DNA from: Ascidiella aspersa
Taxonomy: Eukaryota
Assembly (NCBI GenBank): GCA_963924565.1
Contig: OZ004610.1
Coordinates: forward strand, 19,654,001-19,718,000
Length of the DNA: 64,000 nucleotides
Direction of reading: 5' to 3'
This document shows positions 2,768 through 37,383 of the stretch, piece after piece (the stretch's first letter is position 1; the number at the start of each line of letters is the position of its first letter). A program made the position numbers and the translations under genes. The notes under the pieces are model-generated. The model had not been told where the DNA came from. It saw only the letters and a list, made by a program, of their open reading frames with translations, and did not search any database.

Positions 2768-4472
2768 TGAGATATTAAACGTGTTTATCAACACTTAAAC
2801 ACCCAAATTAATTAATTGCCATAAGCCAAATCTTAGAGTTCATTAAGTTATCTTACGAATTTTTAAATAGGGCTTTAGATTACGCGTTTCAGCTTTCGTT
2901 TGCCAAATATGTTCTTCAGTTACAAAATAACATATTTGATGATGTAAAATTTTCCGTATTGTTGTGTGTAAAATTCCTAAGTTTTTCTGCTTTGGTTCGC
3001 CTCGTTTCAAACTTGACATGTAACCTTTAATCTCGTAATCTATAACAGTCAGTCTTGTGGGCGATGTTCTCACGTTCTGCACAACAAGCCACTTGTTTTG
3101 CTGGCCTCTTACTCCCGCTGCAATTTGGCCTTAGAATGGCCGCTGTAATGCCTAGCCATGTTTTCAGAGTGCCGGCCAGTCTTATTGGCCAAATATGACG
3201 TAACTTTCGTGTTCTTTTTCTTCCTACGTATTGGCTATATACATGTCGTTTCTTAGCGGCTTTGGGCTGTTCTCTAGAGAAGTTTTTGCGAAGTCTTGGC
3301 CGACAGTCGCTGCAATAGGCGGTGGCTGTCTGTCTCACATTAACTTGAAAATAACGTTCACTAATGCTATTTGATAACGTTTTAATTCGTTGTAACAATA
3401 TACTTTTGATTGGAATTTTAGTTGTGGTTATGACAGGTAGCATATCTGACCAGAAACCTTTGCAAACAACAAGAACTCACGCGGTTGCGACCCGCCGGGC
3501 AACTGTATGGGGTCAGGGGCCAGGCCCCAGTGCACAGGTCGCGGCGGGAGCGCAACAGACATCCATGAGATATTAAAAGCAATTAAATAAAATACCTGAT
3601 TCTACTTATGCATATAGCTTCAATTAAACCTTACTACTATCTGCTGCTGTTAATGCTAAGAAATGTTGTTGTCAGAACAGCGTTACCAACCAGCATGGTT
3701 AAATCAAGGCTTATATGTATATGTATTGGTTAAATGTACATAATAAATACATTAACTAGACTGATCAAAAAGGCCATTCCAAAGATTTGTATATCATGTA
3801 AGTTGATTTTACCTAACTTGACGCTGCCTTGTTGCAATAAAAAAATATTTTTCGATGCCAGTAAAAACGAAGTATATTTCTATGAGCAGGAGCTAAAATT
3901 AAGTTATTCTGCTTTATTAGTATTGTGTATAGTACCTAGTATACCAATACATCACTAATCCCTTAAAATTCGGTAAAATAATCACCAAATATTGGCATAA
4001 AGACAATTTTAAGATACCTCTCCCATAAGCCGTAATGCAAAATTTACGCACTTTTGGAACCTTTCAAGATGGCGTAGAAACCTTCGAATTGGCTTCAATT
4101 TTCAACCACTAGTTGCGCTATCCAGGTTTCATAGAGATCAGTGGTGACAGGTGTTATCGATTTAGTGACACTGACAGGGTGTCAAGAAACATTAAAAACT
4201 CAACTCCTCTGTAAGAAACTTTACAGCGTCTTCCCAATCTACAGCTCATAATCGCTTAATTATGTATGTTTTAATCTCATGACGCAGACGAATAAATATA
4301 ATATTACTTAGCCCACCCTAACCATATAAATAGCTGCAGTAAGCATTACGTCCTACCTTATCCTGCCTAACATTTAGTCAAAGTATTTTCCGGTAGACAA
4401 ATTCGCCCGTATAGCCTATATGCAAAATCGCTAGCAACCCCACTCCAACCCTCTGATGTTGTTATCAGCATC

Positions 4473-7400
4473 ATGTCAAGCCTGAAAGTTGTACCTGGAA
4501 GTTTTGGATATCCGATCATTGGAGAAAAAGCTTTGGAGTTTTACAGGTGCATATTTACTGGTTTGATCACTCATGTCAACCATGTTTGACTATTTCATAA
4601 CTAAATGCTTAGGGATTTGCATCTGCATCACCAGTCTGTGCGCTGGCCTAGAATCTTACCACAACTCACATTGTTTGGGTTAGGGTGCGGGGTTAGCATT
4701 TTATGTTAGTGTGGGTGAAGTATTATTATTAAAAAATGAATATAATAATACTTGACCTATCCACAACCAAACGCTAACTCGCACCCTAATCCAAATATTG
4801 TGTGTTGATTTAATAATTGTGGTAGGATTCTAAACCAGCACCCCAGTTTGCATTACATGCATTTTTGTGACAAATTTTAAGGTTTGCAGACGGTGTTCTG
4901 CGACATATTTTAAGGTTTACAGATGACCAATCACGTTTTTTGCACACATGAAGTTCAAGATCTTACCGCAACTCAATCTTTCTTATAAAGTTTAGGTGTG
5001 CCATTGTGTTATTCAGGCGTGCATAAAAATGTAAAAATATCTGGTTTGCACTTGCCAAAGAATGCAGACTGGCTGTTGCAGGTGTGCAATCAAGGTGTTT
5101 AACAACAAGATCTTAACCTTTTTAGGTTTGTTTCTAAGCGAAAACTTAGACTCGCCAGGTGAGCAAGCGGGAAGCAGCTATTAATTAGCACTTGCCCAGA
5201 CAAAATAGCACTCACCAAATTTGTTGGCACGCCATCTGCAAAATTCTGTCCTAGCGCGGTTATTTCTTGGGTTATTGTTAAGCTGTCTTATAGTTTCTAT
5301 AGGTAAACATTAATTTTTATAAAAGTCTGGTAATTTAATTACATGCATGAATGAACAAATTAAAGACCCATAAAGCAGTTTACGCTTAAAACAATGTTTT
5401 TTAGACGAAATATTTTTTTTAGTGAAAAAAATAATACTGACAATTTAGTAGCCAGGGCCTGCCTGTTTTATATTATTTTCACCGCAGGTTGCTTCCTGCC
5501 ACAAACAAAACCATTTCGCTTAACACTTCGCTTAATACATTTCGCTTAACACTATAGTTCATGCCCAGGGTGGTCCAAACCCAGGCCCGCATTGTTAGTG
5601 GCCCGCGAAGTACTGTTGAATTATTGTAATGCGTGCAGTTGAGGGTTTAATCAAAGAAACAAGAATGACTAACGATCAGCAAGCATACTGCAATTGTTTG
5701 CTTATGATCACATTTTTCCGGTTACACCAATAAATAAACCAGTTTACTATTGCTCATCAAATTGGTGTCCAGGGGGTGGCAAGAACATCTAATTTTTGTG
5801 TTAGACCAGTTTGAAAGTTGCAGTACGTCCTATATGCAACTTTCTAAAATGGCTGTTTTGCAAACCTTAATAATTAAACATTTGCGATTTTTTAGTTATA
5901 TTTGCGCTTTGTTTAACGTCTTTTCAAGATAAACATAACATAAAAAGCCCCAGATAAATTACTATTTTGGCCACTTTAAAGTAAATAAACAATAAAATAT
6001 ATCGCGTTTCTGAAAATTATTGTTTTCACTATGACTAAAGGCTAACGCCCTGACCGTTTCATGATGTCATTTCAGCCAAATTGATCTATTTAAAAACATT
6101 CTACGCTTATAACCTATATTAAAAGTTTTGTCAAATATGAATTTTTTTTTTCTGCTTCGCGTGCACCATTTTGCCAGTCTCATAATAATTATTATTCATA
6201 ATATTTTGTTTAAATGGTGCTTATCACAAGTTGTTCTGCACTAACTAATCAATTTTTCTTTCCACTAGCCATTTTAAAGGAAATAACTACTTGCCTGTAT
6301 TGCTCAGTTTCACATGCATCCATAAATTATTGTACATTGATCTTGGTTCAAGAGGTACTATTCAATTTAATTGCAATAAAGTTAAGCAAATTAAGTCTAA
6401 ATTTAAAGCTGAAAATAAAGTCAACAACATGCCCGTTTGGTCATTTTTCAATCAATAGTAGTTTTCCTGTTCCTCTAAAATATTTTCTCTTGTGCAATGT
6501 ATGCAATTTCTCTTCATAGGTTTGTTTGCCCCGAGGGGGAGGGGCTGGGAGGGCACGCCGCTCGACACCACAGGCTTAAAACTGTGGAGTATATGCCTTC
6601 ACAACACGTGTGTCAAAATCAGCTAGATAAAAATCAATGTAGCACAAGCAGTGTGCCAATTCAAAAAAGTCTCCTAAATTACAGTTTAGCCAAATCAACC
6701 AAATAAAACTCAATTGTTTTCGCGCTTCGCGTGACCAACAATACAATTCACTGTTTTTATGGTGTCTCAGTGCATTGATTTGAAAAATGCCGAACTGGTT
6801 TTCGTAGGGGGGAGCGCGAGGCATAGGAAAATTACCAAAGGGGGATGCAACTGAAAAAAGTTTAAAAACCACTGGTTTAAATTATCTGCTTGTGCAAGTT
6901 CTTTGTCTAGACCGTTCCATTCAAAAATGACTCTTTGTGTTAGGCAGAATTTTGTACAATTAGATTTTACTAAAGGCTTTAAGATTTTAAAATAATGACT
7001 CATGTTTTGTTGCTTCTAAGTATAAAAAACTCTTCTTTATTTAAACCTTCTTTTCCATGCATAATTTTACAAACTTCTATAAGGTCTGCCCGTAATTTTC
7101 TCATTTGCAAGCTTAACAGTGGGGTTTCCTGCAATCTAGTGATGTAAGGTTTTTTTTATTTCCTTATCATGCTCTTCGTTGGACTTTTTCTATTGCAATA
7201 ATTTCATATTGTTGGTACAGTCTCCAATCTCCATGCTTAAGTAGCATATTCAAGTATTGGCCTGACTAAGATCTTGTATGGCAGAATATTAGATTTAGTT
7301 TGTTTTCAAATGTTCTTCTAATTCAACCTAACAACTTATTAGCTTTTCCAACGGTTTTCGTAAAGTGTGCTAAAGATTTAGTCATGAGAGATATCAACAC

Positions 7401-10400
7401 CAAGATCCCTCTCAGATGTAACTGTTTCCAGTTGTATACTATTTGTGTAATATGGTAAGACAAAGGGTTTATTGATAAATATATCACCTTGCATTTATTT
7501 TCAACTTCATTTTCCATTTGGTAGCCCATTCAAAGAGTATGTTGAAATTTGAAATCTCAGTAAACAATTATCACAAAACTAAAACTGTGATTCCTGCAAT
7601 GTGACATTGCAAACATTGCACCTGGCGTTGAAAACACGTCGGTGCTTATCGCCGCCAACGCCTAATCAACGCTTGTTATCGTTGTTTCATTTAGCATTTC
7701 GTCTGTCTACAACTCAAGTACTGTAGTCTTAATCAAGCTTAATAACGGAAATATATTTTATTGTTGGGACAAACATTTTCAACAACGTAGAAAACAAGCT
7801 TGTAAGGTACAGCAAACGTCTTCACCGCAGGTCGCTCTATTGAATGTTTTTTATTAGCCTCAATCTCGAAAAAGAGCGCTTGGCCGTCGCATTTTGAAAC
7901 ATAAATTAAAACGTCAGCGAACTATAGCTTTCCGCTAAACTGATAATAAATGGCCGTTTTACCGTAACTTCAGTAATAAGCCATGTGTTTGTGTTTTTTT
8001 TGCTCAGTTTCAGCTGAGTAATTTACTAATTATACAGGGTTCTAAAAGGGCGATTTTGAAGCCACGCTTCATAATATTGGCGAAATTAAACTACAAATAT
8101 CACTAAACTTGTTTAATAAACATCGTTAAGTTTGCTGACAACGAAGTGCAACAGTTTGTGATTGTTACGTCACACAGGCTGTTCTGACACCGCAAATCCA
8201 TATCGTTTCACGCACAATTGAAATCACTTGACAATCGGACGTAAATAAGACAACGAGGTGTTGCAATTTTTCTAACGTCAAACAGACGACTTTAAACAGC
8301 CGTAAGCTCCTAACAATCGCCGTTTTAAGCGTCTAGAATACACGAAACGTAAAATTTTTCGGGCTTCGCCCGTACTTGCTGGAGTTTGTTTACACTATAC
8401 CCCAGGCCCCCTAGTTGGTTTGGGTTACTGATCATGTGACACAGTGGCGTATCCAGGGGGCTGGGGTTTAAGAAAAACTATTGTAACCAAAATCTAACGC
8501 AAAACTCCGTTTTTGTCTTTTTTGGTCGACCGTAAACGCAATATATAATTTATCTCTTTCGATAATTGTTGAGGTTGGCTGATTAATTATCAAGTGTGAA
8601 TTCGACAATTAACAGTTCACTAAGTCAAACCCTCTTTCTTTTCTTACGCTAAAAAGTCGAAGTTAGGCGCAGCTAATGCTCCTTGCTGTTCGCTGTCTGC
8701 TCTAATATTAGATATTGGTTAACAACGGATTAATTTGAACTGAATCAGATTCTCAAAAGGTGGTATAATGATGATTATCATGCGCGTTTTAAAGTCGCCA
8801 TTTTTATGTAATGATAGTTAACGCAAAATTGTTCTCTATAAGCGTATTCTAAGACCATGTGTTTAGTGTGCAGTGGACACAACATATTTTCCTTCAACCG
8901 CAACTTGTATTTTAGCTCACTTGGCACACAGCTAGCACAGATGTTGCGCTAATCGTCGCATAATAACACCAGGAAAAAACGATTTTCGTTTAGTATTGGC
9001 AAAAAGCAGGTGGCCAAAAGCGTGCCGGTAATTTAGCGCTAGTCACGTACATGGAACTTAAGAATCTGCGCTGCTTAACGTAAAAAATTCGACTATCACA
9101 CGTATTTTACGGTCTTGGTTTAGTTTTTCGCCTGGCAGGAGTGTGGACGACGCACGTGTTATTTTGCTGGACGTTAGTTGTTTCTGATTAGAATGCTTTA
9201 TGACGTCATTACGAAAACCTGTGACATATATATTGATCTAAAATTACTAACAAACGTAAAGTCGAAGCAGCAATTGTTCAAATTTCGTGAAATTCAAGCA
9301 AATACATAATTCCGGTACGTATTTGCTGTTTGCTGCATTAAACGCGATATTTTGCAAACTCATTCCAACTGTTGCATAGTTTATACTCTGTTAGGGTTGC
9401 TGAACGTTGTTTGTGTAAGTGTCTTAATGCCTCATGAAAACATGTTTGGGAAATTACTGCAATAATTGCACTATTTTGCGAACTTTGGCTATCTTTTTTG
9501 TGGTTAAACAAACTGCAAAAAGCTATTCAACATAAAAGTATAAACTTTTGCCGAAGCTTAATTTGGTGTTACATTTATATATTATGAAATATATTTCTCT
9601 TTTATAAACTAGATCCTATAGTGACTGATTTTGAATGAGACAAGAAAGTCTATACTGTTTTAGGCAAAGGTTATCAACAAGTATTAGGTTGCTCAAAAAA
9701 CACTATCGCTGCATTGCATGGCTACATTTATTTCAACTGCATGTAAAATTAAGCGTAACCTTAGGTGAAAAAAATTAGAAATTGTATTGCATCCAATAAC
9801 CTGTTATATACTGAAAAACTAAACAAATATGCCTGGACTTAAATCCTAAATCTTATATTCTACTTTGAACATCCCTAGCAAATATGCAGCTCAAAACCAG
9901 TTAAATTGTAGAAAGTACTAAAAAATAGCATTTATGTGGGTAAATTGGCAAAAAATTCATTTATGAAAAAAAACCTGACATGTTTGTTTTTTAAATGTCT
10001 TTAAGGAGAAGGGAAATTACTTGGTGCCCCATGGGTCCGGTGTCAATGTCTTATTTGTTTTTTTCTATTTATCTAAAATTGCAACTATGGCCCATAGGAA
10101 TAACTGAAGTTCTTCGGGTCATATAGTCCAATTCTGCCATTTTCCCTTTTACATCTTGATTTTTTGACAGGGATCCAGTGAACTTTATAGTAAATAAAAA
10201 CCAGCAGTATGGATGTAAATTTTTTGTGGTTAGATTTTTGAACAATCCTACAGTTTTTGTTTCGGATCCTCACTGCATCAAAGAACTTCTTGCTTCAGGT
10301 ATAAAATATGTGCAAAACATTGACAATGTATATATATGAGTTATAATTTTGTTTATCCAGAAAAATCATTGAAATTTGCTTTTGGATATAAAGCGTTTCT

Positions 10401-13400
10401 TCAACGAATATTTGGCAATAATATCCTGTTTGAATCTGATGCACATGCATTGTACCTGCGCAAATGCCTCAAACCATTTTTTTCATCCGAAAATGTATAT
10501 AAGGACACCATAAATAGGTAATTTTTTGTGATGTATACTTAATATTTAAACTTCTTTATTCAAATTTTGCATTTAATGGACTTAAATAAATTGCAGTTTA
10601 GTATTAAATTGCTATGAAAATCTTAGTTTATTTTATATTTAAGGATTCTTGATCCATTTATTCAATCTCTCAACGCTAGGTGAGTTGTTGTTTTACTGCC
10701 TTTTAGGTGTAATTTTGGGTAAAATTTTAATGCCACATTTTTGGTAAGAATTATATGCTGAGGATATTTTGTTTTTCATAGTATTCAATACTGTTTTACA
10801 TATCACCCTAACCAGTAGTCTTTATTTTAAAAGCAATCTCATTTGCACTACCAAGTGTTTCATTACCTATGGATGACAAAACAAAATTCGATGGCATTTT
10901 AATTTGTTTGGGTTGCCGACTCCGGTGGTTTACTTCTCTAAATTTTGAACTTACTAATGCTGTTTTCGTATCTGTGTTTTGTTCACTGTAAGTTTAGTAA
11001 AAATTGTTGGGTAGCTAATAGGGATGTTTAAAGTAGAATATTGAATCCTTGTATTCGAATCCAAATGGGATTTGCATCCATTTCTACCGTTTATTTTGGG
11101 TAGTTGGAACCGATATAATTTTTTGTTTTACTGCCAATGTTTTCTGCTAATTGAACATGTTATGCTACTCACGATTTGATAAACCGATAACCTTCGCCTA
11201 ATAAATAGGTGTCCATCAAGTGTTATGGGGCGAGCGACTAACAGGTAATGCCAGGTGCGGAGTTCCGCAATTTCCTTAACTGCAAAAACTAGCAGAAGTA
11301 AAAATCCATGGTAAAGCATGTTGGCCGGCAAAAAAGGGCTACAACCTGGGCATGTATTACAGTTTACACAACTGCTTCAAATAACAGTTGTTAAATAGGT
11401 TAAATATTTGTTGAATTATTATTTGGTATTACAATATTGTTTTGCGATTTATTACTGTGACTGGGGGCCCTTTAAGGTAGTCTACATTAAAATTAATATC
11501 TTCACAAACAAAATCGAGGTTAAATAATTTAATAAAAACATATCAGGATTCAATATTCTGGATTTGTTATTCTAGAATTGAAACCTAAAGTTCTAGAATC
11601 CCCTGGGATTCTACTTTAAACATCCATAGTAGCAAAAGCGTTGCTGTATTAGTCTTAATATTTGGGTATCTGAGAAAATAAAGCTCTATTGTTTTTAACT
11701 GTGCTATTTTTTACATGATTTTGACATTACTTGATTTTGTAGAACTGATGCAGTGCCTGTCTATGAAGAGACTAAACACATGATGACTAGACTTAGTATT
11801 GAGGTATTCCTTGGATTAGATGCCACTACATCTGATGACATTTTTCAGACAATTAGTGAATTGGCTACAACCCATTGGCATGGTAATAAACAATTATTTT
11901 TGTGAGGTAATTTTTTATTTTTTCTATTCCAGTTCGTATAAACCAGGCCTGTACAATATATGCCAGCAGGTAACCTTTTAATACGGCCTGCAAGCATTCC
12001 ACAATGTAATAACATTTTTTGGTGTATAATTTGTAATTGAATAAGTGTGGACTTAGTTTTGTGTTGATCACACATAATTACTATAGTGAATAGTTTAGTC
12101 ATGCATTCATTTGTTAAATTGACCAGGATATGATAGTATAGTGAGATTATTTCATAGGTAGGCAAACTTTTAGCTTGTAAGTCTCATTTCCAAATTCAGT
12201 AGATTTTAGCGTTTTTACCATGCCGTAGTACATGGAATATTCTACTGTGGGGTCACATTAATTTTTTTTTTTTTAAAGATCCATTTCGTACATGGAATAT
12301 TCTATTGTGGGGTCACATTAATTATTTCTTTTTGAATTTTTTTTTTTGAATTTTTTTTAAAGATCCATTTCACAAAAAAGCTCCTGGTTGTTTGTTTTCA
12401 CACATAAACAGATAGGTAGGAACATTCTGGACTACAATTGGCAGGAATTCTGAAAGTTAATTTTAAAACATAGTCAACTTTGATCATAGAGTTGTTGTGT
12501 GTTTGCAGTTCACATTGAATGGTCTTCAGTACTCCTATATTGACTTCAAAAAGCAATTTTCGGTAGTCACAAGTCCAGTAAAATAGACAAAAGATAAGTA
12601 TGACATTGGCATTGGCAGGGACATATTAAGGGGTTACCAGGCCATATTCCTTTCCCTAAATTATATTTTTGTCTGTTTTAACTATGTTCATGCTAAAAAA
12701 TTTTGTGCTTATTTCAACTTTAAACCAGTTACACTATGTTAGTGTTTCTGTGTTTAGCAAATCTATTCAGTCCAAATATGCATACTATGGCATGCTACGC
12801 TGTGTGCCTATGACCTCGGCAAACAATTTCCATTATATTAGACTACAAATGTTGTTATTTTGAACAATATGTCAACCTCTTTTATGTACCAGTACCTAAT
12901 GCATTACGTTTGCTTTTAAATTAAAACTAATTTTCGCTTTGCACAATTAAACTGGTTTTCAGCTGCATGTTTGCACATGAGTTTGCTCAAACACATCTAA
13001 ACTATGGAACAGTGTCGAGTAAGAAAATCAGCCTTGTGCACCCGCAGGTTGTACTTTCGCATCCCCCTTATATTTGTTAATATCACAAAAGTTCGGTGCA
13101 ACTCTGAGATCCCATTAAGTGCCTTTTTTATCAAAAAATATTGTAGAAATCAATATACCTATTATTGTAGAATATCTTAGGATTCTATTTAAACATCCCT
13201 ACACACAAGTTGTTTTTAAATCATTAAAAAACATTAGTGAAAATTGAAAAAGGTTTGTGTGTTGCCTTGCTCTTACTGTATTGGCCAAAAATTCTTTTTT
13301 TAATAAAGTTAGTTGTTTTTGGGTTTAAGTACCCCTAATCACAGCCCTAATAATATATTACCACATTTTTACTGATGTACTTACATAACTAAAGTCACAA

Positions 13401-19400: not shown

Positions 19401-22400
19401 TAATTTAGGCAGTTTTTTGGTCCTAAATAGTTCGGATAAAAAAAATAAAAGAACACTGGTCACAACTAAATTTGGACCTAGTAAGTAAAAAAAAGTATAT
19501 TTTACCAATAACAGTATATGAATAAAACAGTTCAAATTTGGGCATAAATAGGAAGAATAAAAACTTATAAGATAATGGTGTATGTGTAGTCCCTCAAACA
19601 CCTAAAATAATAACAACTATTTGATCACAGGTATAATATCAGTACCATTAAGCTTTAATATTCCAATGGCCCGACAATCTTCCTTCAGCCAAGCAATTGA
19701 TGCAAAAGAAAGGTTGCTGCAGGTTATAAGAGAAGCGCTTTCCAAATCAAAAAGTGAAGAAACTCAAAAAGGTCAACATTTTTTTTCTATATTTCATATA
19801 ATTTTTTTAAACAATATAATCTAGATACCAATATGGTATTATTTCAAATAATACTTGACTTTGTTCTCTAATTTTTACCATATGCCTAAAATTTTGCACA
19901 TGGGCATCAGGTGCAAAGTGCACAATTTATCAAATGTAATAGTGCCAAAATGGGCTCATCGGCGACCTTTTTCGTTTCACTTTCTTTTGTTCTGCTAACC
20001 TTTATTTTCAGTCTGCTAAAGCGCAGCGGCAGACCACAGCTTTTAGGCCATCTATTTTCATAACAATTTAGACATAACATATTTTTATTTATTTGGCGAC
20101 TGAGGATTAGGAAAATGCAATTAGTGTGCAATTTTCACTTTGAAAAACTGTAATAAAGATATGCCATGCCAGTTGCACAATGTGCTGAACTCGCAAAATA
20201 CGGCCTGCCAATGTAAAACATACAGCCTGCAACCTTTTTACAACTGGCAAGAAGGCCATTTCGCCACAAGGCATTCGTCATATATTTTTTCTGTATTTAA
20301 CCAACTTCGAATATTTTAATGAATTTAACAGCTTGGTCTTATTTTAATTTAATTTATTTTCAATTGTAAACTAAAAATTGTCAGTTAAAATTTAATACGG
20401 GGCCCACCGAGACATTTTAGGTTTCGAATTGACATGCATCTGCAAAAAGGTTGCCGAACTCTGATGTGGGTCATGCTTATAGGCTGATAAGAATTCTGCC
20501 AGAGTGAAACTTCTTCTTCTGGTAAGATCTGCATCAACCTATTAACTGAGCGTGAAATAGACAGAACTGCAGACCTGTTTTTTCCTACTTTGATATGCCA
20601 TTTTACACACTGCTTCGTATGACATAATAATTCCCAAATCTATAAACATGCTGTGATGCTCTGCCAAGTAATCGATTTTGAGAGACAAAATACATTGATT
20701 CAAAGATAAAACACAGTAGCTAAAACTTGGTTTCCCGAGTACTGTTATGTTTCTTTTGTGATTACTACCAAGTAAGCATTTTGTACTGATTTCGAAAAAA
20801 CGCCCTGCAAAATTTCAAAAAAACACCCTGGAAATTCATGTTGGGCAGTTTTCTTAGGCGCCTAAATGAAAAGCCTGATATATATTTTGATCGGAAGCTT
20901 TACCCGATGTAGTATCAGCATTCCTCTGATCCAGAGTAGTATTGGCGCCAGTCTGATACCAACTGACTTGGTATTTCTAACCATGGTTAGCGTTAAAATG
21001 CAGTAATTTTAGCCTTTAAAGGATATTAGGTAAAACTCGCTTTGCCATGGACAAGTAAACAATAAACTTGTCTGATTAGCAAGTGTGTATTCAACAATTG
21101 ACAACACTAAGTCAAGCCTACTTCCTTTTTTTCTTGCTAAATTCGTGGAGTTAGGCGCAGCTGAGATTTCTTGCTGTTCGCTGTCTTTGCTAGTATCTGA
21201 TGTTGGTGTAACAATGGAATTTAACTGAAACAGATGCTCTTCAAAGGTGATCTAACTGTGACTTCATGCAGGTGGCAAAAGACTAGCTTGTAGTTTCGCG
21301 TAGTCCTGTACATGGAGCTTAACTGATAGTTGAATTATGATGCTACCAAAATGAATCCCACATATTTCACGGTCTTGTTTTGTTGGCCTGAAGTTTCAGA
21401 TCGTACAATAAGCGGTTTCAAAACTTGCACCTGGTAGGAGTGTTAACGTTGCGCGGGTTAGTTTTGCGTCTAAAGGTTTGCTTTTGCTGAAGGTTAATGG
21501 GCATTTTCTGATTTTTTTTGTATTTATGACATCTTTAGACGGAAAATAGGGGAATTGCCGTGGAAAAGTGGAAGATTGGGTAGGACCCTCCCCTATTTTA
21601 GATTCCTGATTACATATTCAATTTAAACCTCTTCAACTGTATTATTAACCCTAATACTGGACACAGCCAGACTCTGTGACACTTTAAACCAGACTTAAGT
21701 TGATCAGCAGAGGTCTGATCATTTTTTTATTAAATAATTGTAGGCAATTAAAGGTAAAATGCAATACAAGAAGCACAACATTTTTGCGTGTCAAGCAATC
21801 CTAGTCTTGAAATGAATGGAAGTACTGACAAAAGCAGAGTGTTACAATCTCCAGCAGTGTTTTCACATCACTCGCAATATATTCACATCACTCGCAATAT
21901 AATTTGGTTGAATGTCAGTTGCAATCACCTAATTTATGATTAGGAAGTTTGCAAAATATGGCATTTATTGCAGGGGTTTGGCAATTTGCATTTTAAAACA
22001 CGATAGGATTTTTCTCATGTTGTATGCAATTTGTCCTGGGATTATGTGTGTACTTGAATATCACACAATTTTCATAAAAACTACCACACAGGTTGTATCA
22101 TAAACATACTTTGATTAAACAACAGAAAACTTTTTTTAACATCATAGGTCACAGGTCGTATTTCTTATTATGGGGGAGCATGTAGTTACCCATCCAGACA
22201 CAATGAGCAGCCAAACAGACTAGGTAGGCTAGATGTTTTCCGATCACAAAAACTCATCACATGACCTGTATTTTGAAGACCTACGTGTACCACAGGTTAG
22301 GATACCTCGTCCGAAAGCCTTATCGGATTTCAAATTACTACTGCGCATGCACAAGTTGAACTCGGACTTTGGTAGCTTTACATGGTCTTACTAGAGTCAT

Positions 22401-25400
22401 GAGTCTGACTACAGCAATGAAAACGATTCCGTTTAGATTCGACTGTCACTCTGCAGCCCTGGTTGCTAATATTACCCATTATAAATGGCAAAATTGGATT
22501 CAAATCTAATCTAAGGATCTGATATTCTTCTTTGAACTTCTATAATTAAGATTTAAACTATATTTCCAAATTTTTTATCAAATTGCATTTATTTGCTGAA
22601 TAAGCATTTTGCTTAGTTTTATAAACCTGTTTGCTCGTGAACGCATCGTCCTTAAAAGCAAAAAAATTATTCAACCACTTTGCAAATTTTAGTATTACCA
22701 AATAAGGTTTGCATGCCAAGGATGATCTGTAAAAACAATATGCAGTCATGCAATGGAGCATACTTATCACAGTTTCTCATTTAAAATCATGCATTTTTTC
22801 ATTACCAGGATATTTTTTTAATATTGAGAAAACAAGTTGCTTTAAAATATAAATTTATGGCATTTTATTTTCTATTATGACTGTAGTGTTCTAATTATTT
22901 TTGATTATGTGTGGTTAATGTTTTGATCAGGGCAGGAAAGTCTACTCCAAGAAATGATAAAAGTCCAATTTCCAGATGATAAAGACCTAGAACAGCATAT
23001 ATTACTGTTTCTTTCGGCACTGATTCCCAAGGCATTTGCATCTATTGTCACATCTTTTCTACTTGCAATGTCAGGTGATGAAAAGGTATATCATTGAAAG
23101 AATAGTTGTATGTACTGTAATATATAAATAGGGGTATGTACTGTTTTTGTGTATGTGAATTAATCAAGAAAACCTTGTTTGCACATAAATATGTTTTTTA
23201 TCCAATAAAACCCCTTCTTTCTATGCTATAAGGCAGGGTGTGCATCGCGCGGATCTTTTTTTGAAACTATACCAACTATAGGAAACTAACCCTAAAAATA
23301 TTCCCCTTGACAATATATATATATATACCTCACGCAACTCTGTCTAGTTTTGTTTGTTATCGTCTTTTCATAAAACCATTGATGTCATTTGAACCATTGA
23401 TGTCATTTGACCTATGCAACCACTCAAGTTTTTGGAATAAAATAACTGCGAAAACATCCGCTTGTGGCCAGTTATGTTTCAGTTTGGCTCTTGAAAAAAG
23501 CAACTTTTTCTTTGTGTTTTTGAATTTAAAAAAATGTTTAACAACCCTATCGTCACATTCCAAGAAAGAAGTAAAGCGGGATTTTTAATTTCAAACATGT
23601 TATTGAGCAATTCAAACATGTTGAATACAACAGATTGGACCATTATATACGGATCTGTTCATTAGTTTAATGATGAAAATAACGGCCCAAATAGACGTTA
23701 AAAGCGACATGCTTTATTTTCAAACGTTTTGGCAATTTCTAATGCCATCATCAGTGATATGAAGGCCACATCGGTTGCACCCGTTTATACACACTTTGGT
23801 CGCACCAGGAAATGATAAGAATGATAAAAAGTGCGAAACAAGCGTCGCAAAAAGATAGATAAAAAGGTGCGCAGCAAAAACGAGGAGCGAGGTGTAAAGC
23901 CACCTGCCACCGATGTGGCCTTCATATCACTGATAATGGCATTAGAAATTGCCGAAACGTTTGAAAATAAAGCATGTCGCTTTTAACGTCTATTTGGGCC
24001 GTTATTTTCATCATACAACAAACGTTTTTTAGACATTTAGATACAGTTAACTACTGAAGATAAGTGTTTTAATTTAAAAAATAGATCTTAATCTCACAAA
24101 TATAGACCATTTTGCTTTTGGTATTTCATTAATACTTGTAGCTTTTGGTATTTCATTAATAGTTTTTTTTTTTAGAAGGAAATGAGAGAACGAGCGAGGA
24201 TGAATGATTCATTTCTTGATAATGTTCTGCTGGAGGTACAGAGGTTATGGCCTCCCTTATTTGGTGGACGCCGGATCGCAAAAACAGACTGTTCTCTTGC
24301 ACAGTTCAAGATACCAAAAGTAATTTTATCCTAAAAAATGAATAACAGTCTTTAAGTTTTTTAGACTCAATTCAAGTTAAATATTTGCACATAAGTACGC
24401 CGAACACAGCAGGTTTCTTTAGTCTACTTGGATTATGACGTCATCTCTAAAAACGCATATTAACGCAAACCAAAAAAACTAGGGGTAATTTTCCTATTTT
24501 ATTGCATTAGGGCAGGGATGACAAACCTTTTAGCATAAAACTTAAAAAAAAATTGAGTTTACGTGCCGTATCATGCCATGGTACGATACCTTTGGGCTGA
24601 CATTTCCTTAAAACCACAATAAGAAAAACACATCTTGCTTAACAATGATGGTTGCACAAGTGTTCGATGTGCGACATTAGACTCGATAATAGTCTCACAA
24701 AAAATATGAGATGAGGCCTACATCTAATACTGCGCGTTCTACACGTTTTGATGATATTCTTCAGGGCAAATTAACTTGTAACCTTGCAGAAAGGTATACA
24801 GTGAAGAAAAACGACGAAAAACCAAGGTGGCAAAACAAGGCTGGAATAACGTGAGAACGCGATAACCGGCTCCAGCCTTCTAATGGCTACTGCACAAAAA
24901 TTGATAAGAAGGTGCAAGAAATGTGTCTTGCTTAACGTTCATGGTGCTTTCATGATTGTATGTATCGCCCAGGATTCTAGGAAGACACGGCGGTGGTAAT
25001 CTCCTTCTGGAGTTACAATAGAAGCACATTCAAAGTCGATGTCATGACGTTGCTTTGTCGCGTGACTGGCCAAAGCAGATTTCGACGTTTCAAGCATTCA
25101 ACTTTTTTTTTTATTATTATTAATAAAATAAATAACGAAAAAACGAGCAAGAAAAACAAATCAAAATAGTGAAGCTCTCAAGCAGCTAACGACCATTTAC
25201 TTTTGTGTTTTGTCATACTTCCTCTTTTTAAAGTCGAATATCGCTCGGAAGTTCGCACAGAAGATAACATCATAAGAAAGCGTAACATAGTCGGGACAGC
25301 TTCGGCATATTTACATTGATAAATAACATATAGCGCGCATAAAAGGACACAATTCACAAATGTTTTGCACGGTTCATTTTTGTGCACTCCAAAGAGTAAT

Positions 25401-34400: not shown

Positions 34401-37383
34401 GTTTCACCAAGGCATGTACTTGACTTGATTTTTACCGTCACGCAGGTTATTGCCCTATAAATGTTTGGAAACGTTTTGCCCTTTTAAACGTTAAGAGGTT
34501 TTGCGAGAAGTCGCACGCGCGCCCTTTGGATTTAACATGCAACCAAAGTGCAATGTTGTGTGATGTTTTTTAAATGGTAATACTAAATAATCGACTATAG
34601 CACACAACCCAAGCATGTCATACATATTTCAAGTAACAAAACTGGTGACATTTGTCAATTTGTAATAACTCTCGCGCGCAAAGCTTTAGTTTATAGCAGC
34701 AATTGTTTGAACTTTCTTAATAGCGTGAAACTTAAGCAAATCCGTAATCCCGGTGCTAAACTGCAAGGGTGAAAAAAAACCCTCAGTGAAAATAAAAATT
34801 TCTTACTGTTAAACTGCTGCAATAAACGCAATATTTTGCGAACTCAGCTTAAATGTTGCGTAGTTAAACGAAGCACAATCACATCAATTTTTTTGTGAAG
34901 GTTTGTTTTACGACATCCGTGTAGGTTTTGGTGTTTAATCAAATTATGTTTTAGTATACATCCCATGTGGTAGACGTATTTGTTCGACTTGTGTGATATT
35001 TAAGCAAACTCGTAATCCCGGTACCAAATGGCGTACAACGAACAAAAATCCGTATCGTGTTTAATAGTGAAAATTGCTAAACCTCTGCACTAAACGGCAT
35101 ATTAAGCTGCGTCCAACGCCAGACAAACCCATAACCTGTTTGAAATATTGCTTACTATTCAAACTGCGTCAACAAACGCGATATTTTGCGAACTCTTTCT
35201 AAATTTGGCGTGGTTAAACATACCGCTATACTTCGAACGCTGCACACGTTCGGTAACAATAAATTTAAAACATGTGATGTGCTTTTTGTTGTGAAACCGA
35301 AGGCGCTGTTCCCTTGTCTGTTTGCCGCTGGTTGTGTCTGAAACGGGTTAATTTAATTCTTTACCTTTACCACAATAAGACTATATCAGCTTATAAGGAT
35401 AAGGTCTGTGTGGAAGCTATACATTGAATTGATTAGCGTAGTATAACTTATTATCGCTTTAATCTGCGTGACTGTAAAGTCAAATTCAATGTATCTAAAC
35501 AAAAAGCAATGTCGTGTGCTACCATTACCAAACTGCATCCAACGTAAAAATAATCGGCAATTCACGTGTAACCATTTTATGTGTGTTTTTTTATTTCGCT
35601 GTAATCGAATAACATGTAATCTATATTGTAAAACAGAAAAGGCGATGATTGTCCCTAGACATTTGACCGCTAATTGTGTCTGAAAGGGTGTAATTAAATT
35701 CTTTCTCAACTGGCGTGATATAAAAGTTTGCTGAAACCGCATGTTACAGCCGATGGTTTAAAAAATATTGTGACGCAGCCTTGTGTGATTTTTCCGTAAT
35801 GGTACGACAAAATACTCAAAAAACCCTTTGAAAATATAAATTGCTTACCCATGGCCGGTTTGCTAAAGCGCTCGCTTGAGATGCGCGACTTTCTTTCATA
35901 GAAAGACCCTTTTTTGTCTGGGAGCACATGACTTTCTTTCTATTTTCCCTGTCACTCGGTTTCTCGCTTGACAGGAGGCAGTGTGAGCGACGTTGCTCTG
36001 TTTGTGTCTTTGAGATCGCATGTCAGCGACCGAGCGGCGAACATGTGAGGTCGAACGGCGGACAAACTTTCTAATATATTATAAGATATTTCTTTATTAT
36101 GTCACCGGCCTTTACGAATTTGTTAAATTTTGTTTACGAAGTAAAATCAGAAAAAAAATAACTTGCCGGCTTGTTAACCTTTGTATTATTAACAAGATTG
36201 ATTTATTTAGTTGAGATAGCTTTGCCTAACGTACGTGATTTTGGAATGTGTAGGTTTGCATTTTTGTTTGTTTATTATTTTTTTTAAACGGCCTACTAAA
36301 TTTCCACTAAAGATTTAATAACTTTTATATAGGATTATGCTGTGGTATACGTTTCTCAAGTTGCTCAGCGAGACGAATCTGTGTTTCCCCAAGCAAGCAC
36401 TTTTCTTCCAGACCGTTGGAGCACCTGGTAAGATTACTATTGGGTCAATCACCAATGTATCAAAGAAAAAAATACATGAAATGGAAGTATAAATTACAGT
36501 TTTGCGAATATGAGCATGTTATTTCGACCTACCAGGATATATGTTATGTTTTATTTCAGTAAAACTTATATGCGTGATGCAGCGTTTTATTCTGTTTGAG
36601 GGAACAGTAGTAATGACGTCAACTGATATCGGTATGGCAGTACTTTTAGCCCAATATATCGGGTAACAGTATCGAAAGTTTATACGAAGTATCAGACATC
36701 TCTAATTACAGCGATGTGTTTCCGTTCATTGTCACACGGTGTAGAAATTATTAAACCCACACTTGACATTTGTAAGTTGGCTAAAACATGTTAACAATCG
36801 GCATAACTAGATTATTTGCAATAATGCCAATTTAAACCATTTAAAGCATATTTGAGTTGGGGGTGAAATTCGCGTGTGTATGCTTATTGTAGCAAGATAT
36901 AAGCAGAACCTACTTTTTTTTGTTTTCATTAAAATGCCATTCAACTAGTTGATTATAATTACTAATAATTTAGTACTAATATAAAAGCTTGAACTTTTAA
37001 AGAGGTTATACTCTCTTTTATATTGAGGTATATTTTTAGAGAGATTTAGTTTGAATATCGTTTGAAGGGGTTCACGGAATGAAAAAGGTTGAAATACACT
37101 GGCCTACATACATGTTTTCCATTGAATGCTGACACACAACCTATAATCTATATTTCGAAGGAATGAAAACGACAAGGATCTTATCTTCTGCTTCGGGGCA
37201 GGTTCAAGATGCTGTATCGGACGCAAAGTTATTAATGACATACTCCATGACGTCACCAAACGACTTCTTTCTGCTTTTAATTGGCACATTTTTCCCGACA
37301 ACCAGGATCTCTCTTACAAGTACCTACCAGTGGCGAGACCGGTCAAGCCAGCCCTTATAAAATTTACAAAACCGCCGCGATGA
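4473..37383 (+). CDS. Cytochrome P450, ~430 aa, CYP26/CYP120-like; join(4473-4546,10171-10298,10361-10517,10644-10679,11743-11882,19631-19771,22931-23085,24176-24319,36333-36427,37161-37383)
   Basis: All introns are GT-AG with consistent phases; total 1293 nt. Motifs: Pro-rich PGSFGYPIIGE, K-helix EVQR (ExxR), meander PDRW (PERF-like), heme ligand FGAGSRCCIG (FxxGxRxCxG). Stop TGA at 37381-37383. The exon 6 donor (GTCAAC) is weak. Confidence 0.93.
4638..4843. mobile_element. Palindromic MITE with GGGTTAGGG-like core (copy 2), P450 intron 1
   Basis: TIRs GCGCTGGCCTAGAATC / GATTCTAAACCAGCACCC; flanks CAGTCT / CAGTTT. Homologous to 2317-2490. Confidence 0.78.
8442..9210. mobile_element. Truncated copy of the hAT-type MITE family seen at 14210-15407
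   Basis: Begins CAGTGGCGTATCCAGGGG and shares internal blocks with 14210-15407 (AACCAAAATC.AACGCAAAAC, CGTTTAGTATTG, GTACATGGA, TTGCTGGACGTTA). A Helitron-derived patch follows at ~9210-9400. Confidence 0.65.
12227..12371. repeat. Local tandem duplication (2 x ~60-85 bp)
   Basis: GTACATGGAATATTCTA(C/T)TGTGGGGTCACATTAATT...AAAGATCCATTTC occurs twice in tandem. Confidence 0.8.
14210..15407. mobile_element. Non-autonomous hAT-type DNA transposon, with a nested MITE remnant at ~14616-14930
   Basis: TIRs CTGTGGCGTATCCAG / CTGGATACGCCCCTG; 8-bp TSD GCCAGGTG / GCCTGGTG. Related copies at 8442-9210 and ~21040-21610. Confidence 0.85.
15965..19080 (-). mobile_element. 5'-truncated, degenerate L2/CR1-group LINE, antisense in P450 intron 5
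   Basis: RT motifs YRPISV, QHGFRKGHST, GIPQG..LAPLLF.IYINDL, YADD and KYLG, broken by frameshifts. Long 3'UTR with a terminal stem-loop (16056-16099) and a (TCTA)n tail at 15965-15981. Confidence 0.9.
17511..17804. mobile_element. PIF/Harbinger-type MITE inserted in the LINE ORF2
   Basis: TIRs AGCCCCGTTTACACTACAGCTGCACTGAGC / GCTCAGTGCAGCTGTAGTGTAAACGGGCCT; TTA TSD. Removing it restores the LINE frame ...HLYETRLKENQNFYRF... Confidence 0.9.
19085..19440. repeat. ~42-bp minisatellite, 8 copies plus a partial
   Basis: Unit ~CGTACGTAGCTCAAATAAAACTAATTTGGCCACTTTTTTGTC. One more unit sits at 15929-15965, on the far side of the LINE. Confidence 0.9.
23670..24014. mobile_element. 110-bp inverted repeat pair, each arm carrying a minimal hammerhead-ribozyme motif (Penelope-like pseudo-LTR derivative)
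   Basis: Arms 23670-23779 and 23905-24014 are near-perfect reverse complements. + arm: CTGATAA-TGGCA-ttagaaat-TGCC-GAAACGTT. - arm: CTGATGA-TGGCA-ttagaaat-TGCC-AAAACGTT. Confidence 0.75.
25103..27837 (-). mobile_element. L1/Tx1-like LINE with intact ends but endonuclease and RT core deleted
   Basis: 5' end TCATTCCCAGTC and 39-nt 5'UTR. ORF1 with CCHC knuckle. ORF2 C-terminal remnants (LSLLGKTTVIKSL, FLWGSKWERVKR, ETLYHLFYLC). Poly(A) tail at 25103-25112. 13-bp TSD TCAAGCAT(T/C)CAAC at 25090-25102 and 27838-27850. Confidence 0.88.
26510..27798 (-). pseudogene. LINE ORF1 (gag-like, CCHC knuckle) with disrupted Cys-rich C-terminal extension
   Basis: 27187-27798 encodes CKYCGEKGHKQANC. Reading through one stop, one frameshift and one further stop continues via a low-complexity linker into ICPGC...VC*SC...KCC...CQCPSC...PCC...CIQC...CNC...CKAC...CSC. 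Confidence 0.7.
28835..31200 (-). mobile_element. Fragment of an LTR retroelement (3' ORF, PPT, partial LTR), LTR split by a hAT MITE
   Basis: On -: PPT AAGAGGGGGTAAA (30137-30149) followed by TGTCAC at 30136. A 225-aa ORF (30350-31027) lies upstream of the PPT. No clean CA LTR end found. Confidence 0.55.
29194..30103. mobile_element. hAT (Charlie/SPIN-like) internally deleted transposon
   Basis: TIRs CAAGGGTCTCAAAC / GTTTGAGACCCTTG; perfect 8-bp TSD CTTTAAAG. Transposase N-terminal remnant on - at 29511-29699 (RKITDERKVFQDKGEELYF...YCLIC...AVMKKYN..LHFET). Confidence 0.9.
31210..32175 (+). mobile_element. Penelope-like retroelement 3' fragment (RT thumb, GIY-YIG endonuclease remnant, pLTR with hammerhead motif)
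   Basis: PFLDILV...VYRKPTNTDRVLHFTSHHP; GVVYCIPCAEC..VYTGKTGR; SAL..H...H..DF; FLESW. Hammerhead-like C(A)GAAGA-AGATTGCCT-gaat-AGGTAATC-GAAACGTC at ~32127-32161. Confidence 0.88.
33590..36086 (-). mobile_element. Non-autonomous Helitron (2.5 kb), antisense in P450 intron 8
   Basis: On -: A|TCTTATAATATATTAG 5' end; 3' hairpin CCTTGGCAACGCCGGGT then TTAG|T (CTAG variant); inserted between A and T with no TSD. Internal degenerate repeats (GTAATCCCGGT at ~34257, 34744, 35012). The second copy ends in canonical CTAG|T. Confidence 0.82.

What the first reader, a model, noticed from the sequence alone, without database searches (positions are those of the whole stretch)
4473..37383. Anchor-less animal P450 whose I-helix has lost the oxygen-activating acid-alcohol pair
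Seen: the protein starts MSSLKVVPGSFGYPIIGE, so the Pro-rich hinge sits at residue 8 with no hydrophobic anchor or mitochondrial presequence. There is an in-frame TAA at 4368-4370 and no in-frame ATG between it and 4473. ExxR, PDRW and the heme Cys motif are intact and all ten exons are in phase, so the gene looks functional. The I-helix reads LLFLSALIPKAFAS instead of (A/G)Gx(E/D)T(T/S). Established: animal P450s are almost all membrane-bound, and P450s without the acid-Thr pair (CYP152 peroxygenases with Arg-Pro, CYP74, CYP5A/CYP8A isomerases) use peroxides rather than O2 plus reductase. Inference: this may be a soluble, reductase-independent peroxygenase or hydroperoxide isomerase, with the Pro-Lys pair binding a carboxylate substrate (retinoid, fatty acid or oxylipin). 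I recall similar invertebrate proteins annotated only as CYP120/CYP26-like, but cannot check that here.
Basis: partly seen in the sequence, partly recalled or inferred. Interest (0 to 1): 0.8.

Follow-up and report, generated by a model that had tools for sequence, protein, structure and literature searches.

The report
Anchor-less P450 with lysine I-helix
This is an intact, expressed gene for a small cytochrome P450 that has no membrane anchor and carries a lysine where such enzymes normally have their oxygen-activating acid; it belongs to an old, widespread but unstudied animal family rather than being a one-off.

Summary
Ten GT..AG exons (4473-37383, + strand; 1293 nt, 430 codons) encode a P450 with EVQR, PDRW and FGAGSRCCIG intact, starting seven residues before the Pro-Gly hinge. 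RNA reads join exon 1 to exon 2 (6 reads) and run unspliced through the suspected acceptor at 4467-4468 (7 of 7). So no anchor exon is spliced in there.

The gene is single-copy and closest to ascidian proteins (56% to Phallusia). It is not unique. At least 73 database clusters, from choanoflagellates to sharks and some teleosts, form one sharply bounded family. Of 64 aligned members, 50 have 8 or fewer residues before the hinge, and none has a hydrophobic anchor. All share the I-helix SAL(I/V)PKA. The Lys is invariant (64 of 64). It aligns with the acid of CYP120A1, the nearest solved structure (Z 42), and the following Ala aligns with the Thr.

Public names are automatic ("P450 120"). The distribution fits the orphan CYP16 family, but I could not confirm that with a named sequence. 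No prokaryotic relative carrying the family motifs was found.

The peroxygenase/isomerase reading is plausible but untested. Verdict: a new member of a known, uncharacterised family. The family-wide features are the interesting part. The scan's notes hold no earlier finding of it.

The parts
4325..4333 (+). TATA-like element (TATAAATAG), about 140 nt upstream of the ATG. Possible core promoter.
   Evidence: Read by eye. Function is inferred. It is consistent with RNA depth of 4.1 in bin 4300-4499.
4368..4370 (+). In-frame TAA upstream of the start codon. It closes the reading frame.
   Evidence: There is no Met in the 34 codons between it and 4473.
4473..4546 (+). Exon 1: start codon, seven residues, then the Pro-Gly hinge. 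Ends in phase 2.
   Evidence: Junction 4546>10171 is seen in 6 RNA reads. 7 of 7 reads run straight through 4467. Aligns to residues 1-24 of P0060.
10171..10298 (+). Exon 2 (A helix and beta-1 strands; holds the invariant Arg).
   Evidence: The acceptor is confirmed by RNA.
10361..10517 (+). Exon 3 (B-C region, C helix).
10644..10679 (+). Exon 4: 36-nt mini-exon (D-helix region), phase 2 to phase 2.
   Evidence: the only one of 15 AG..GT candidates in the intron that resembles the family. Its donor is GTGAGT. It aligns to the expected place in P0060, P0058 and P0007. No RNA was laid on it.
11743..11882 (+). Exon 5 (E and F helices; invariant Tyr, Lys and Phe, and the HWH of the HWHG motif).
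19631..19771 (+). Exon 6 (F-G loop and G helix). Its first two bases complete the invariant Gly codon.
22931..23085 (+). Exon 7: I-helix with SALIPKA in place of (A/G)Gx(D/E)T(T/S).
   Evidence: Single copy in the genome.
24176..24319 (+). Exon 8: K helix EVQR and the beta-1 strands.
   Evidence: Pfam PF00067, E 0.0013, profile positions 315-359.
36333..36427 (+). Exon 9: meander with PDRW.
   Evidence: Pfam PF00067, E 0.0094, profile positions 362-389.
37161..37383 (+). Exon 10: heme loop FGAGSRCCIG, L helix, C-terminal hairpin with the invariant Lys and Pro, and the TGA stop.
   Evidence: Pfam PF00067, E 0.00018, profile positions 402-462..

Best explanation
Shown:
- This is an intact, transcribed, single-copy ten-exon gene, probably in an ascidian genome.
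- It encodes a 430-residue cytochrome P450 of a sharply bounded family found in animals and choanoflagellates.
- Every member begins directly at the globular domain, without a membrane anchor.
- Every member carries SAL(I/V)PKA in the I-helix. An invariant Lys aligns with the conserved acid, and an Ala aligns with the conserved Thr.

Inferred from distribution: this is the family that P450 nomenclature calls CYP16 (clan 16). It is an orphan, lost in tetrapods.

Inferred mechanism:
- The protein is a soluble cytosolic heme-thiolate enzyme.
- It cannot run the usual acid-alcohol proton relay for O2 activation.
- Its distal side carries family-specific basic residues. These are the I-helix Lys and His, two His in HWHG at the end of the F helix, and a Lys in the C-terminal hairpin.
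- I think it most likely holds an anionic lipid (fatty acid, oxylipin or retinoid) or its hydroperoxide over the heme.
- It would then work by peroxide-type O-O chemistry (peroxygenase or hydroperoxide isomerase), without a reductase.

The descriptive part I hold at about 0.95 and the CYP16 name at about 0.8. The confidence given below is for the mechanism.
For: Gene model: GT..AG at all nine introns, frame closed, 1293 nt.

Transcription and start:
- Junction 4546>10171 is seen in 6 reads, all in one orientation.
- 7 of 7 reads are unspliced through 4467.
- Depth is 4.1 in bin 4300-4499.
- An in-frame stop lies at 4368.

Single copy.

Family:
- The heme exon found 56 relatives, including 415-431-aa full-length proteins.
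- 85 proteins match P0007.
- In the profile search, 73 of 105 hits score 246 bits or more and the rest 127 or less.

No anchor:
- 50 of 64 have 8 or fewer residues before the hinge Pro. 0 of 64 reach Kyte-Doolittle 1.6 in the first 60 residues.
- Model residues 1-3 align to residue 10 of CYP120A1, 37 of CYP90B1, 29 of CYP21A2 and 58 of human CYP51.
- The F-G loop is short, without F'/G' helices.

I-helix:
- Lys 64/64, Pro 63/64, Ala 61/64.
- HMMER aligns P-K-A to H-E-T of CYP120A1.
- The model breaks the helix at residues 244-246.
- 0 of 125 motif-bearing proteins have the canonical motif.
- No acidic residue reaches 85% conservation in the F or G helices, so no partner for the Lys was seen there.

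Window copy: it keeps 20 of 21 invariant columns plus the split Gly codon.
Against: - There are no biochemical data for any member (searches found none).
- The heme loop is fully canonical (Phe, Gly, Arg, Cys, Gly). This is usual for partner-driven P450s.
- The nearest solved relative, CYP120A1, has a normal acid-Thr pair.
- Monooxygenases lacking the pair exist: the CYP7 clan and EryF-type enzymes (my own knowledge).
- The reductase faces the cytosol, so a soluble P450 could still be reduced.
- I could not obtain model coordinates, so the position of the Lys side chain relative to the iron was not measured.
- The I-helix register rests on one sequence alignment plus the predicted helix limits.
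Confidence: 0.45

Rival explanations
1. It is an ordinary O2- and reductase-dependent monooxygenase that delivers protons by another route. That route could be the Lys or His residues, ordered water, or the substrate's own carboxylate or hydroxyl. The lack of an anchor would only mean that it meets the ER-bound reductase from the cytosol or binds the membrane peripherally.
For: - The heme loop is canonical, and ExxR and the meander are intact.
- The closest structures are all monooxygenases: CYP120A1 Z 42.0, CYP90B1 Z 40.1, CYP21A2 Z 39.1.
- Precedents without the pair are known (CYP7 clan, EryF; recalled).
Against: - Both members of the pair are replaced, and the acid position holds the opposite charge in 64 of 64 sequences.
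- No anchor is present in any of the 64 aligned sequences, so there is no tether holding the enzyme next to the ER-bound reductase.
- The F-G loop is short and shows no membrane-insertion helices.
Confidence: 0.35
2. It is a heme-thiolate protein whose invariant Lys ligates or caps the iron. It would then work as a ligand-gated sensor or binding protein rather than a turnover enzyme.
For: - The invariant Lys sits at the I-helix break over the heme.
- An engineered Lys one turn earlier in P450 BM3 ligates the iron. This is recalled; a BM3 A264H entry is among the fold matches.
Against: - Residues of the catalytic scaffold are kept with enzyme-like strictness.
- No natural Cys-Lys P450 is known to me.
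- The geometry was not measured.
Confidence: 0.1
3. A membrane-anchor exon lies upstream and was missed, so the protein is an ordinary microsomal P450.
For: - Only 173 nt upstream of the ATG were laid with reads.
- The transcription start site was not mapped.
- 26 loose ends were not shown.
Against: - 7 of 7 reads cross 4467 unspliced. In that RNA sample the A of the AG reads G.
- An in-frame stop lies at 4368-4370.
- Upstream DNA holds a retrotransposon pol ORF and no P450-like piece.
- 62 of 64 relatives have 25 or fewer residues before the hinge, and none has a hydrophobic one.
Confidence: 0.03
4. The locus is a decaying pseudogene or a non-functional copy.
For: - Introns are long and full of repeats.
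- Read depth is low.
Against: - The frame is open over ten exons with all splice sites intact.
- All family-invariant residues are kept.
- The transcript is spliced.
- It is the only copy in the genome.
Confidence: 0.02

Closest known systems
CYP16 family / clan 16 (orphan animal P450 family, function unknown)
   Same: The taxon pattern reported for CYP16 matches this family's hits.
- Reported: one gene in Nematostella, clustering with clan 26 (PMC8110760, passages).
- Reported: lost in mammals, absent in zebrafish, present in Fugu (PMC5751882, passage).
- Reported: present in Oryzias (PMC11184212, passages).
- Reported: present in a few basal insects (PMC11855896, passage).
- Seen here: Oryzias, sticklebacks, wrasses, sharks, tunicates, echinoderms, molluscs, an ostracod and a hydrozoan, with no tetrapod and no zebrafish among 85 and 105 listed proteins.
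   Different: No sequence in any tool output carries the name CYP16, so the identification is by distribution and my recollection only. None of the passages I read mentions the missing anchor or the Lys I-helix. The key reviews (Nelson 2011 and 2013, Dermauw 2020) were not held and supplements were closed.
CYP120A1 of Synechocystis (PDB 2VE3/2VE4, retinoic-acid-bound soluble P450)
   Same: - It is the best solved relative by sequence profile (E 4.5e-47 over the full length).
- It is also the best by fold (Foldseek TM 0.85; Z 42.0, rmsd 2.4 over 398 residues).
- It is also anchor-less and of similar length.
- It is the source of the automatic name 'putative cytochrome P450 120'.
   Different: - Only 21-22% identity.
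- CYP120A1 has the canonical A-G-H-E-T, where this family has A-L-I-P-K-A with one extra residue.
- None of the 29 pattern matches in one genome per 185,579 prokaryotic species was a relative of the family.
CYP26 retinoic acid hydroxylases (animal clan 26)
   Same: Some members are auto-named CYP26A1 or CYP26B1-like. CYP16 is reported to cluster with clan 26.
   Different: CYP26 enzymes are membrane-anchored and have the canonical I-helix (my own knowledge). No CYP26 sequence was available to me for a direct comparison or a tree.
CYP152 fatty-acid peroxygenases (P450 BSbeta, SPalpha, OleT)
   Same: They are soluble and partner-free. The acid-alcohol pair is replaced by a basic residue next to a Pro, and that basic residue holds the substrate carboxylate over the heme (my own knowledge). 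This is the closest functional analogy to Pro-Lys-Ala.
   Different: - The order is Arg-Pro there and Pro-Lys here.
- Sequence kinship is only generic. 6fyj (E 2.9e-25) and 7wyg (E 4.8e-23) match the C-terminal third.
- They are bacterial.
CYP74 clan, CYP8A1 and CYP5A1 hydroperoxide/endoperoxide isomerases
   Same: These are P450s that lack the acid-Thr pair and need neither O2 nor a reductase (my own knowledge). Animal CYP74-clan enzymes exist (abstract of PMC8124189, listing).
   Different: None appears among the 60 best solved chains for the family profile or the 50 best by Z. The heme loop here is canonical, without the changes typical of CYP74 (recalled).

Membership tests
Cytochrome P450 superfamily (Pfam PF00067) | Heme-thiolate loop F-x-x-G-x-R-x-C-x-G | tested here: met
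   FGAGSRCCIG lies in exon 10. The exon matches PF00067 positions 402-462, E 0.00018.
Cytochrome P450 superfamily (Pfam PF00067) | K-helix E-x-x-R and meander P-x-R-(F/W) | tested here: met
   EVQR and PDRW are present. Exons 8 and 9 match PF00067 positions 315-359 and 362-389.
Cytochrome P450 superfamily (Pfam PF00067) | Whole-protein score above Pfam's gathering cut-off (22.8 bits) | tested here: inconclusive
   The exon pieces score 18.1, 15.2 and 20.9 bits singly, and 6 of 9 pieces gave no P450 hit. The joined protein was not scored, by rule. The closest relative tested, P0007, scores 95.5 bits.
Cytochrome P450 superfamily (Pfam PF00067) | I-helix (A/G)G-x-(D/E)-T-(T/S). This is usual but not obligatory. 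| tested here: not met
   SALIPKA stands in its place.
CYP16 family (clan 16) | At least 40% identity to a named CYP16 member (nomenclature rule, recalled) | not testable with these tools
   No protein returned or 53 carries that name. Supplements and the nomenclature lists were not available.
CYP16 family (clan 16) | Reported taxon distribution: cnidarian, some teleosts including Oryzias and Fugu, some arthropods; absent in mammals and zebrafish | tested here: met
   Compared with passages read. Fugu and Nematostella themselves were not seen in the listed rows.
CYP120 family (cyanobacterial) | At least 40% identity to CYP120A1 and the canonical A-G-H-E-T I-helix | tested here: not met
   21-22% identity. 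The I-helix differs. None of the 29 prokaryotic pattern matches was a relative.
CYP152 peroxygenases | Arg-Pro in the I-helix (recalled) and close sequence kinship | tested here: not met
   Pro-Lys-Ala is found instead. Only the C-terminal third matches, E about 1e-25 to 1e-23, no better than many other P450s.
CYP74 clan / CYP8A / CYP5A isomerases | Close kinship, and the modified heme loop of CYP74 (recalled) | tested here: not met
   Absent from the best 60 and the best 50 solved chains. The heme loop is canonical.
Microsomal (class II) animal P450 | N-terminal transmembrane anchor before the Pro-rich hinge | tested here: not met
   Seven residues precede the hinge Pro. No splice into 4469 in RNA. 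0 of 64 relatives have a hydrophobic N-terminus. The model starts where the anchor-truncated crystal constructs start.

The most novel reading that the evidence does not exclude
The whole family, dating from before the origin of animals and lost in tetrapods, is a new mechanistic class of P450. It would be soluble and independent of any redox partner. Its distal side would carry an invariant Lys flanked by conserved His residues. That set would play the 'pull' role of a peroxidase and make the reactive iron-oxo species from H2O2 or lipid hydroperoxides. This would be the first animal-wide P450 peroxygenase or isomerase outside the CYP74, CYP8A and CYP5A lines, acting on a marine lipid mediator that has not yet been identified.
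Probability: 0.3. Interest if true: 0.8.

Novelty: new member of a known kind. Interest (0 to 1): 0.5.

Why it matters
Animal P450s are taught as membrane enzymes fed by a reductase. Here a conserved family contradicts both expectations at the sequence level. It is single-copy in this genome and is kept from choanoflagellates to sharks and some teleosts. No function is on record for it.

The invariant Lys at the acid position gives a concrete, cheap test. The protein should express in soluble form without truncation. It can then be assayed with peroxides against NADPH/reductase. If the peroxide reading holds, three things follow:
- It names a function for an orphan clan.
- It points to a lipid-mediator pathway that tetrapods lost.
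- It offers partner-free biocatalysts.

If the reading fails, the family still shows a new way of delivering protons in a P450. For this window alone, the result is a sound gene model with a 36-nt mini-exon, the kind of short exon that is easy to overlook.

Tried and rejected
Exon-by-exon family scans were weak. In Pfam, 3 of 9 pieces hit P450 below the cut-off, and one piece gave a chance hit to PF21991 at E 0.17. The heme exon against solved structures gave only 3 hits at E 0.0023-0.33. The family came into view only through the one large search with the heme exon.

Five of the 56 hits are not relatives. P0001, P0008, P0017 and P0039 are repeat proteins with summed scores. P0002 is a tandem repeat of a heme-loop piece. 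I dropped all five.

A nine-exon model without the mini-exon was rejected, because relatives carry about 12-15 more residues at that place.

I considered a CYP7-like or CYP51-like identity from the look of the I-helix and N-terminus. I rejected it because CYP120A1 and plant CYP85-clan enzymes score higher.

A bacterial origin was tested with the search for related loci on prokaryotic genomes. 29 pattern matches were found and 0 were relatives.

I read the GC-rich block in intron 8 by eye as a Penelope-like element. Pfam did not support this: 4 of 5 ORFs gave no hit, and one gave a weak zinc knuckle.

Literature searches found no functional work and no mention of the anchor or the Lys:
- for CYP16;
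- for animal 'P450 120';
- for soluble metazoan P450s;
- for tunicate CYPomes.

These searches cover only the held open-access library. Supplements were closed and may hold CYP16 sequences or motif tables.

No tree against clans 26, 16, 74 and CYP120 was built, because no named reference sequences were available and the window's joined protein could not be used.
Full report
**What is there.** On the + strand an ATG at 4473 opens MSSLKVVPGSFGYPIIGE. An in-frame TAA lies at 4368-4370, and the 34 codons between hold no Met.

Reading the stop-free segments and their borders, I first found nine exons. Comparison with relatives showed about a dozen residues missing after exon 3. A scan of that intron for AG..GT pieces in the right phase gave 15 candidates. 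One of them, 10644-10679, has a GTGAGT donor and resembles the family at that place.

- 4473-4546
- 10171-10298
- 10361-10517
- 10644-10679
- 11743-11882
- 19631-19771
- 22931-23085
- 24176-24319
- 36333-36427
- 37161-37383

All nine introns are GT..AG. The sum is 1293 nt, which is 430 codons plus TGA.

Pfam recognises the last three exons singly as P450 (E 0.0013, 0.0094, 0.00018). Each is below the 22.8-bit cut-off. The six other pieces gave no P450 hit.

Relatives returned by the tools served as proxies.

**Is the start real?** One RNA-seq run of the same species label (X4) was laid on 4300-10299. About 6 in 100 of the run was read. 241 reads were laid, and 218 of them only partly, mostly on intron repeats.
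- Six reads from six start places join 4546 to 10171 across a GT..AG intron. All six share one mate orientation.
- Seven of seven reads covering 4467 run straight through it. They read G where the assembly has A, so in that animal the suspected acceptor is not even an AG.
- Depth is 4.1 in bin 4300-4499, in the same orientation.
- No joint into 4469 was listed. 26 weaker loose ends were not shown, and the transcript start was not mapped.

A TATA-like TATAAATAG sits at 4325-4333 (by eye). Upstream, 23-1795 is a retrotransposon pol ORF with RNase H and integrase domains. No P450-like piece lies before 4473.

**It is a family, not a one-off.** The gene is single-copy in its 308.6-Mb genome. Five of them are repeat artefacts. 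Among the rest are full-length proteins of 415-431 residues that all start at the hinge and all carry the same I-helix.

Searching with the closest hit, P0007, gave 85 proteins. A profile of 64 members gave 105 proteins among 8000 scored candidates. Of those 105, 73 score 246 bits or more and the other 32 score 127 or less. That is a sharp border. The first proteins below the border have canonical AGxET helices.

Named members come from:
- Ciona, Clavelina and Phallusia;
- a nemertean;
- starfish and sea urchins;
- bivalves, gastropods and a chiton;
- an ostracod;
- the hydrozoan Clytia;
- many sharks and rays;
- some teleosts (Oryzias, sticklebacks, wrasses, groupers);
- the choanoflagellate Savillea.

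No tetrapod and no zebrafish appears in those lists. The two family motifs found no relative in one genome of each of 185,579 prokaryotic species: 29 pattern matches, 0 confirmed. The window's exon pieces are closest to Phallusia (222 of 394 aligned residues, 56%), then Clavelina, P0057, Ciona and P0007 (50-52%). The genome is therefore probably an ascidian's.

**The two features are family-wide.** For alignment A1 I chose 64 full-length or nearly full-length proteins by hand from the 138 then held. I left out further isoforms, fragments and the repeat artefacts.

N-terminus:
- 50 of 64 have 8 or fewer residues before the hinge Pro, and 62 of 64 have 25 or fewer.
- The two long extensions (57 and 59 residues) are not hydrophobic.
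- 0 of 64 reach a Kyte-Doolittle mean of 1.6 over 19 residues in the first 60. The highest value, 1.46 in P0007, lies by my reading in the beta-1 region.

I-helix:
- Lys 64 of 64.
- Pro 63, the preceding Ala 63 and Leu 60, the following Ala 61, and Ser 63.

Of 191 proteins held at that point, 125 carry the family pattern, and none of those 125 has (A/G)Gx(D/E)T(T/S). A further 21 have only the canonical motif, all from the low-scoring block. The remaining 45 have neither: 29 fragments of 62-355 residues, 5 repeat artefacts and 11 outgroup P450s.

Other family-specific invariants:
- HWHG at the end of the F helix (His 63, Trp 64, His 62, Gly 64);
- a His at the start of the I-helix (59);
- a Lys and a Pro in the C-terminal hairpin (64 each).

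By their place in the fold these are substrate-recognition sites 2, 4 and 6. That is an inference from the standard P450 map.

The window copy keeps 20 of 21 invariant columns in its exon pieces. The 21st is the Gly codon split between exons 5 and 6.

**Structure.** AlphaFold2 on P0007 with A1 gave mean pLDDT 92.3 and pTM 0.91.
- The I-helix is predicted in two parts, 235-243 and 247-262, with a break at 244-246 just before L-I-P-K-A.
- The F helix ends at 178 and the G helix starts at 193. The loop between is short and of low confidence, and there are no F'/G' helices.

The nearest solved structure is the soluble cyanobacterial CYP120A1. This holds by profile (E 4.5e-47 over the full length), by Foldseek (TM 0.85, 21% identity) and by VIA-align (Z 42.0, rmsd 2.4, 398 residues). 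It is followed by CYP90B1, CYP21A2, CYP725A4 and CYP51.

The model's residues 1-3 align with residue 10 of CYP120A1, 36-37 of CYP90B1, 29 of CYP21A2 and 58 of human CYP51. The protein thus begins where the globular domain begins.

HMMER aligns A-L-I-P-K-A with A-G-(gap)-H-E-T of CYP120A1. That puts Lys on the acid and Ala on the Thr, with one extra residue. The register downstream of the Lys is supported by matching Ser, Leu, Ser and Phe, and by the unbroken predicted helix. Upstream it is uncertain. I had no coordinates, so where the Lys side chain points was not measured.

**Name and literature.** Public names are automatic and inconsistent: 'putative cytochrome P450 120', 'beta-amyrin 11-oxidase-like', 'P450 716B1-like', 'P450 26A1 isoform X2'.

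From passages found with paper reading, CYP16 is described as follows:
- one gene in Nematostella that clusters with clan 26 and now has its own clan (PMC8110760);
- lost in mammals, absent in zebrafish, reported in Fugu (PMC5751882);
- present in Oryzias, with unknown function (PMC11184212);
- restricted to a few basal insects (PMC11855896);
- of uncertain function (PMC11546871).

That pattern fits this family, but no returned sequence bears the name. The reviews that might describe it were not held. None of the searches found functional work or any mention of the missing anchor or the Lys. This holds for the open-access library searched, not for print as a whole. Supplements were closed.

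**How it most likely works.**

Shown:
- an expressed, conserved P450 fold with an intact thiolate loop;
- no anchor;
- Lys-Ala in place of the acid-alcohol pair.

Inferred:
- It is cytosolic and soluble.
- The usual proton relay for splitting iron-bound O2 is absent.
- No acid reaching 85% conservation lies in the F or G helices that could pair with the Lys.
- The conserved family-specific residues around the pocket are basic (Lys, His). This suits an anionic lipid or a peroxide.

By analogy with CYP152 peroxygenases and the CYP74/CYP8A/CYP5A isomerases (my own knowledge), I put peroxide-type, reductase-free chemistry first, at about 0.45. Against it stand the canonical heme loop, monooxygenase relatives, known monooxygenases without the pair, and the absence of any assay. 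A reductase-dependent monooxygenase with another proton route is therefore a close second at 0.35. A Lys-capped sensor (0.1), a missed anchor exon (0.03) and a pseudogene (0.02) follow.

**Verdict.** The locus itself is an ordinary orthologue of a known but uncharacterised family. The family-wide absence of an anchor and the invariant Lys are a well-founded, testable lead.

Noticed in passing
window 23-1795 (+): A 590-aa open frame with RNase H-like and integrase domains (Pfam E 2e-32 to 2.7e-13). It is the 3' part of an LTR-retrotransposon pol gene running in from the window's left edge, about 2.7 kb upstream of the P450 start.
   Followed up: partly
window about 26000-32000 (intron 8 of the P450 gene): A GC-rich block (0.44-0.47 against about 0.35 around it) with open frames on both strands that look by eye like decayed retroelement pieces. 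Pfam gave only a weak zinc knuckle for 27187-27798 (-) and nothing for four other ORFs, so my first guess of a Penelope-like element is unsupported.
   Followed up: partly
window 4467: All 7 RNA reads covering this base read G where the assembly has A, six bases before the start codon. Many other single-base differences occur in the intron reads, so a strain difference is likelier than editing. No DNA run of the same animal was laid.
   Followed up: no
I did not examine it.
   Followed up: no
proteins P0124, P0126, P0128, P0129: A subgroup of family members from unnamed sources has a 13-21-residue N-terminal extension rich in Cys and Lys. This could be a lipidation or metal site, and so another way to reach a membrane.
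   Followed up: no
proteins P0025 and P0159: P0025, from the choanoflagellate Savillea, keeps the HWHG and I-helix Lys motifs. It also carries a long acidic/Pro-rich insertion between the meander and the heme loop. P0159 comes from an unidentified EukProt transcript. It resembles P0025, keeps both motifs and runs out of the P450 frame in its C-terminal part.
   Followed up: no
proteins P0001, P0002, P0008, P0017, P0039: The top-ranked hits of the exhaustive search are long repeat proteins whose many weak stretches add up, plus one tandem repeat of a heme-loop piece. This is a reminder that multi-stretch scores with short queries mislead.
   Followed up: yes
shark and ray entries: Cartilaginous fishes list many isoforms of this gene (up to X11 in Scyliorhinus, X2-X8 in Mustelus), with lengths from 322 to 480 residues. 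This suggests heavy alternative splicing or uncertain models.
   Followed up: no
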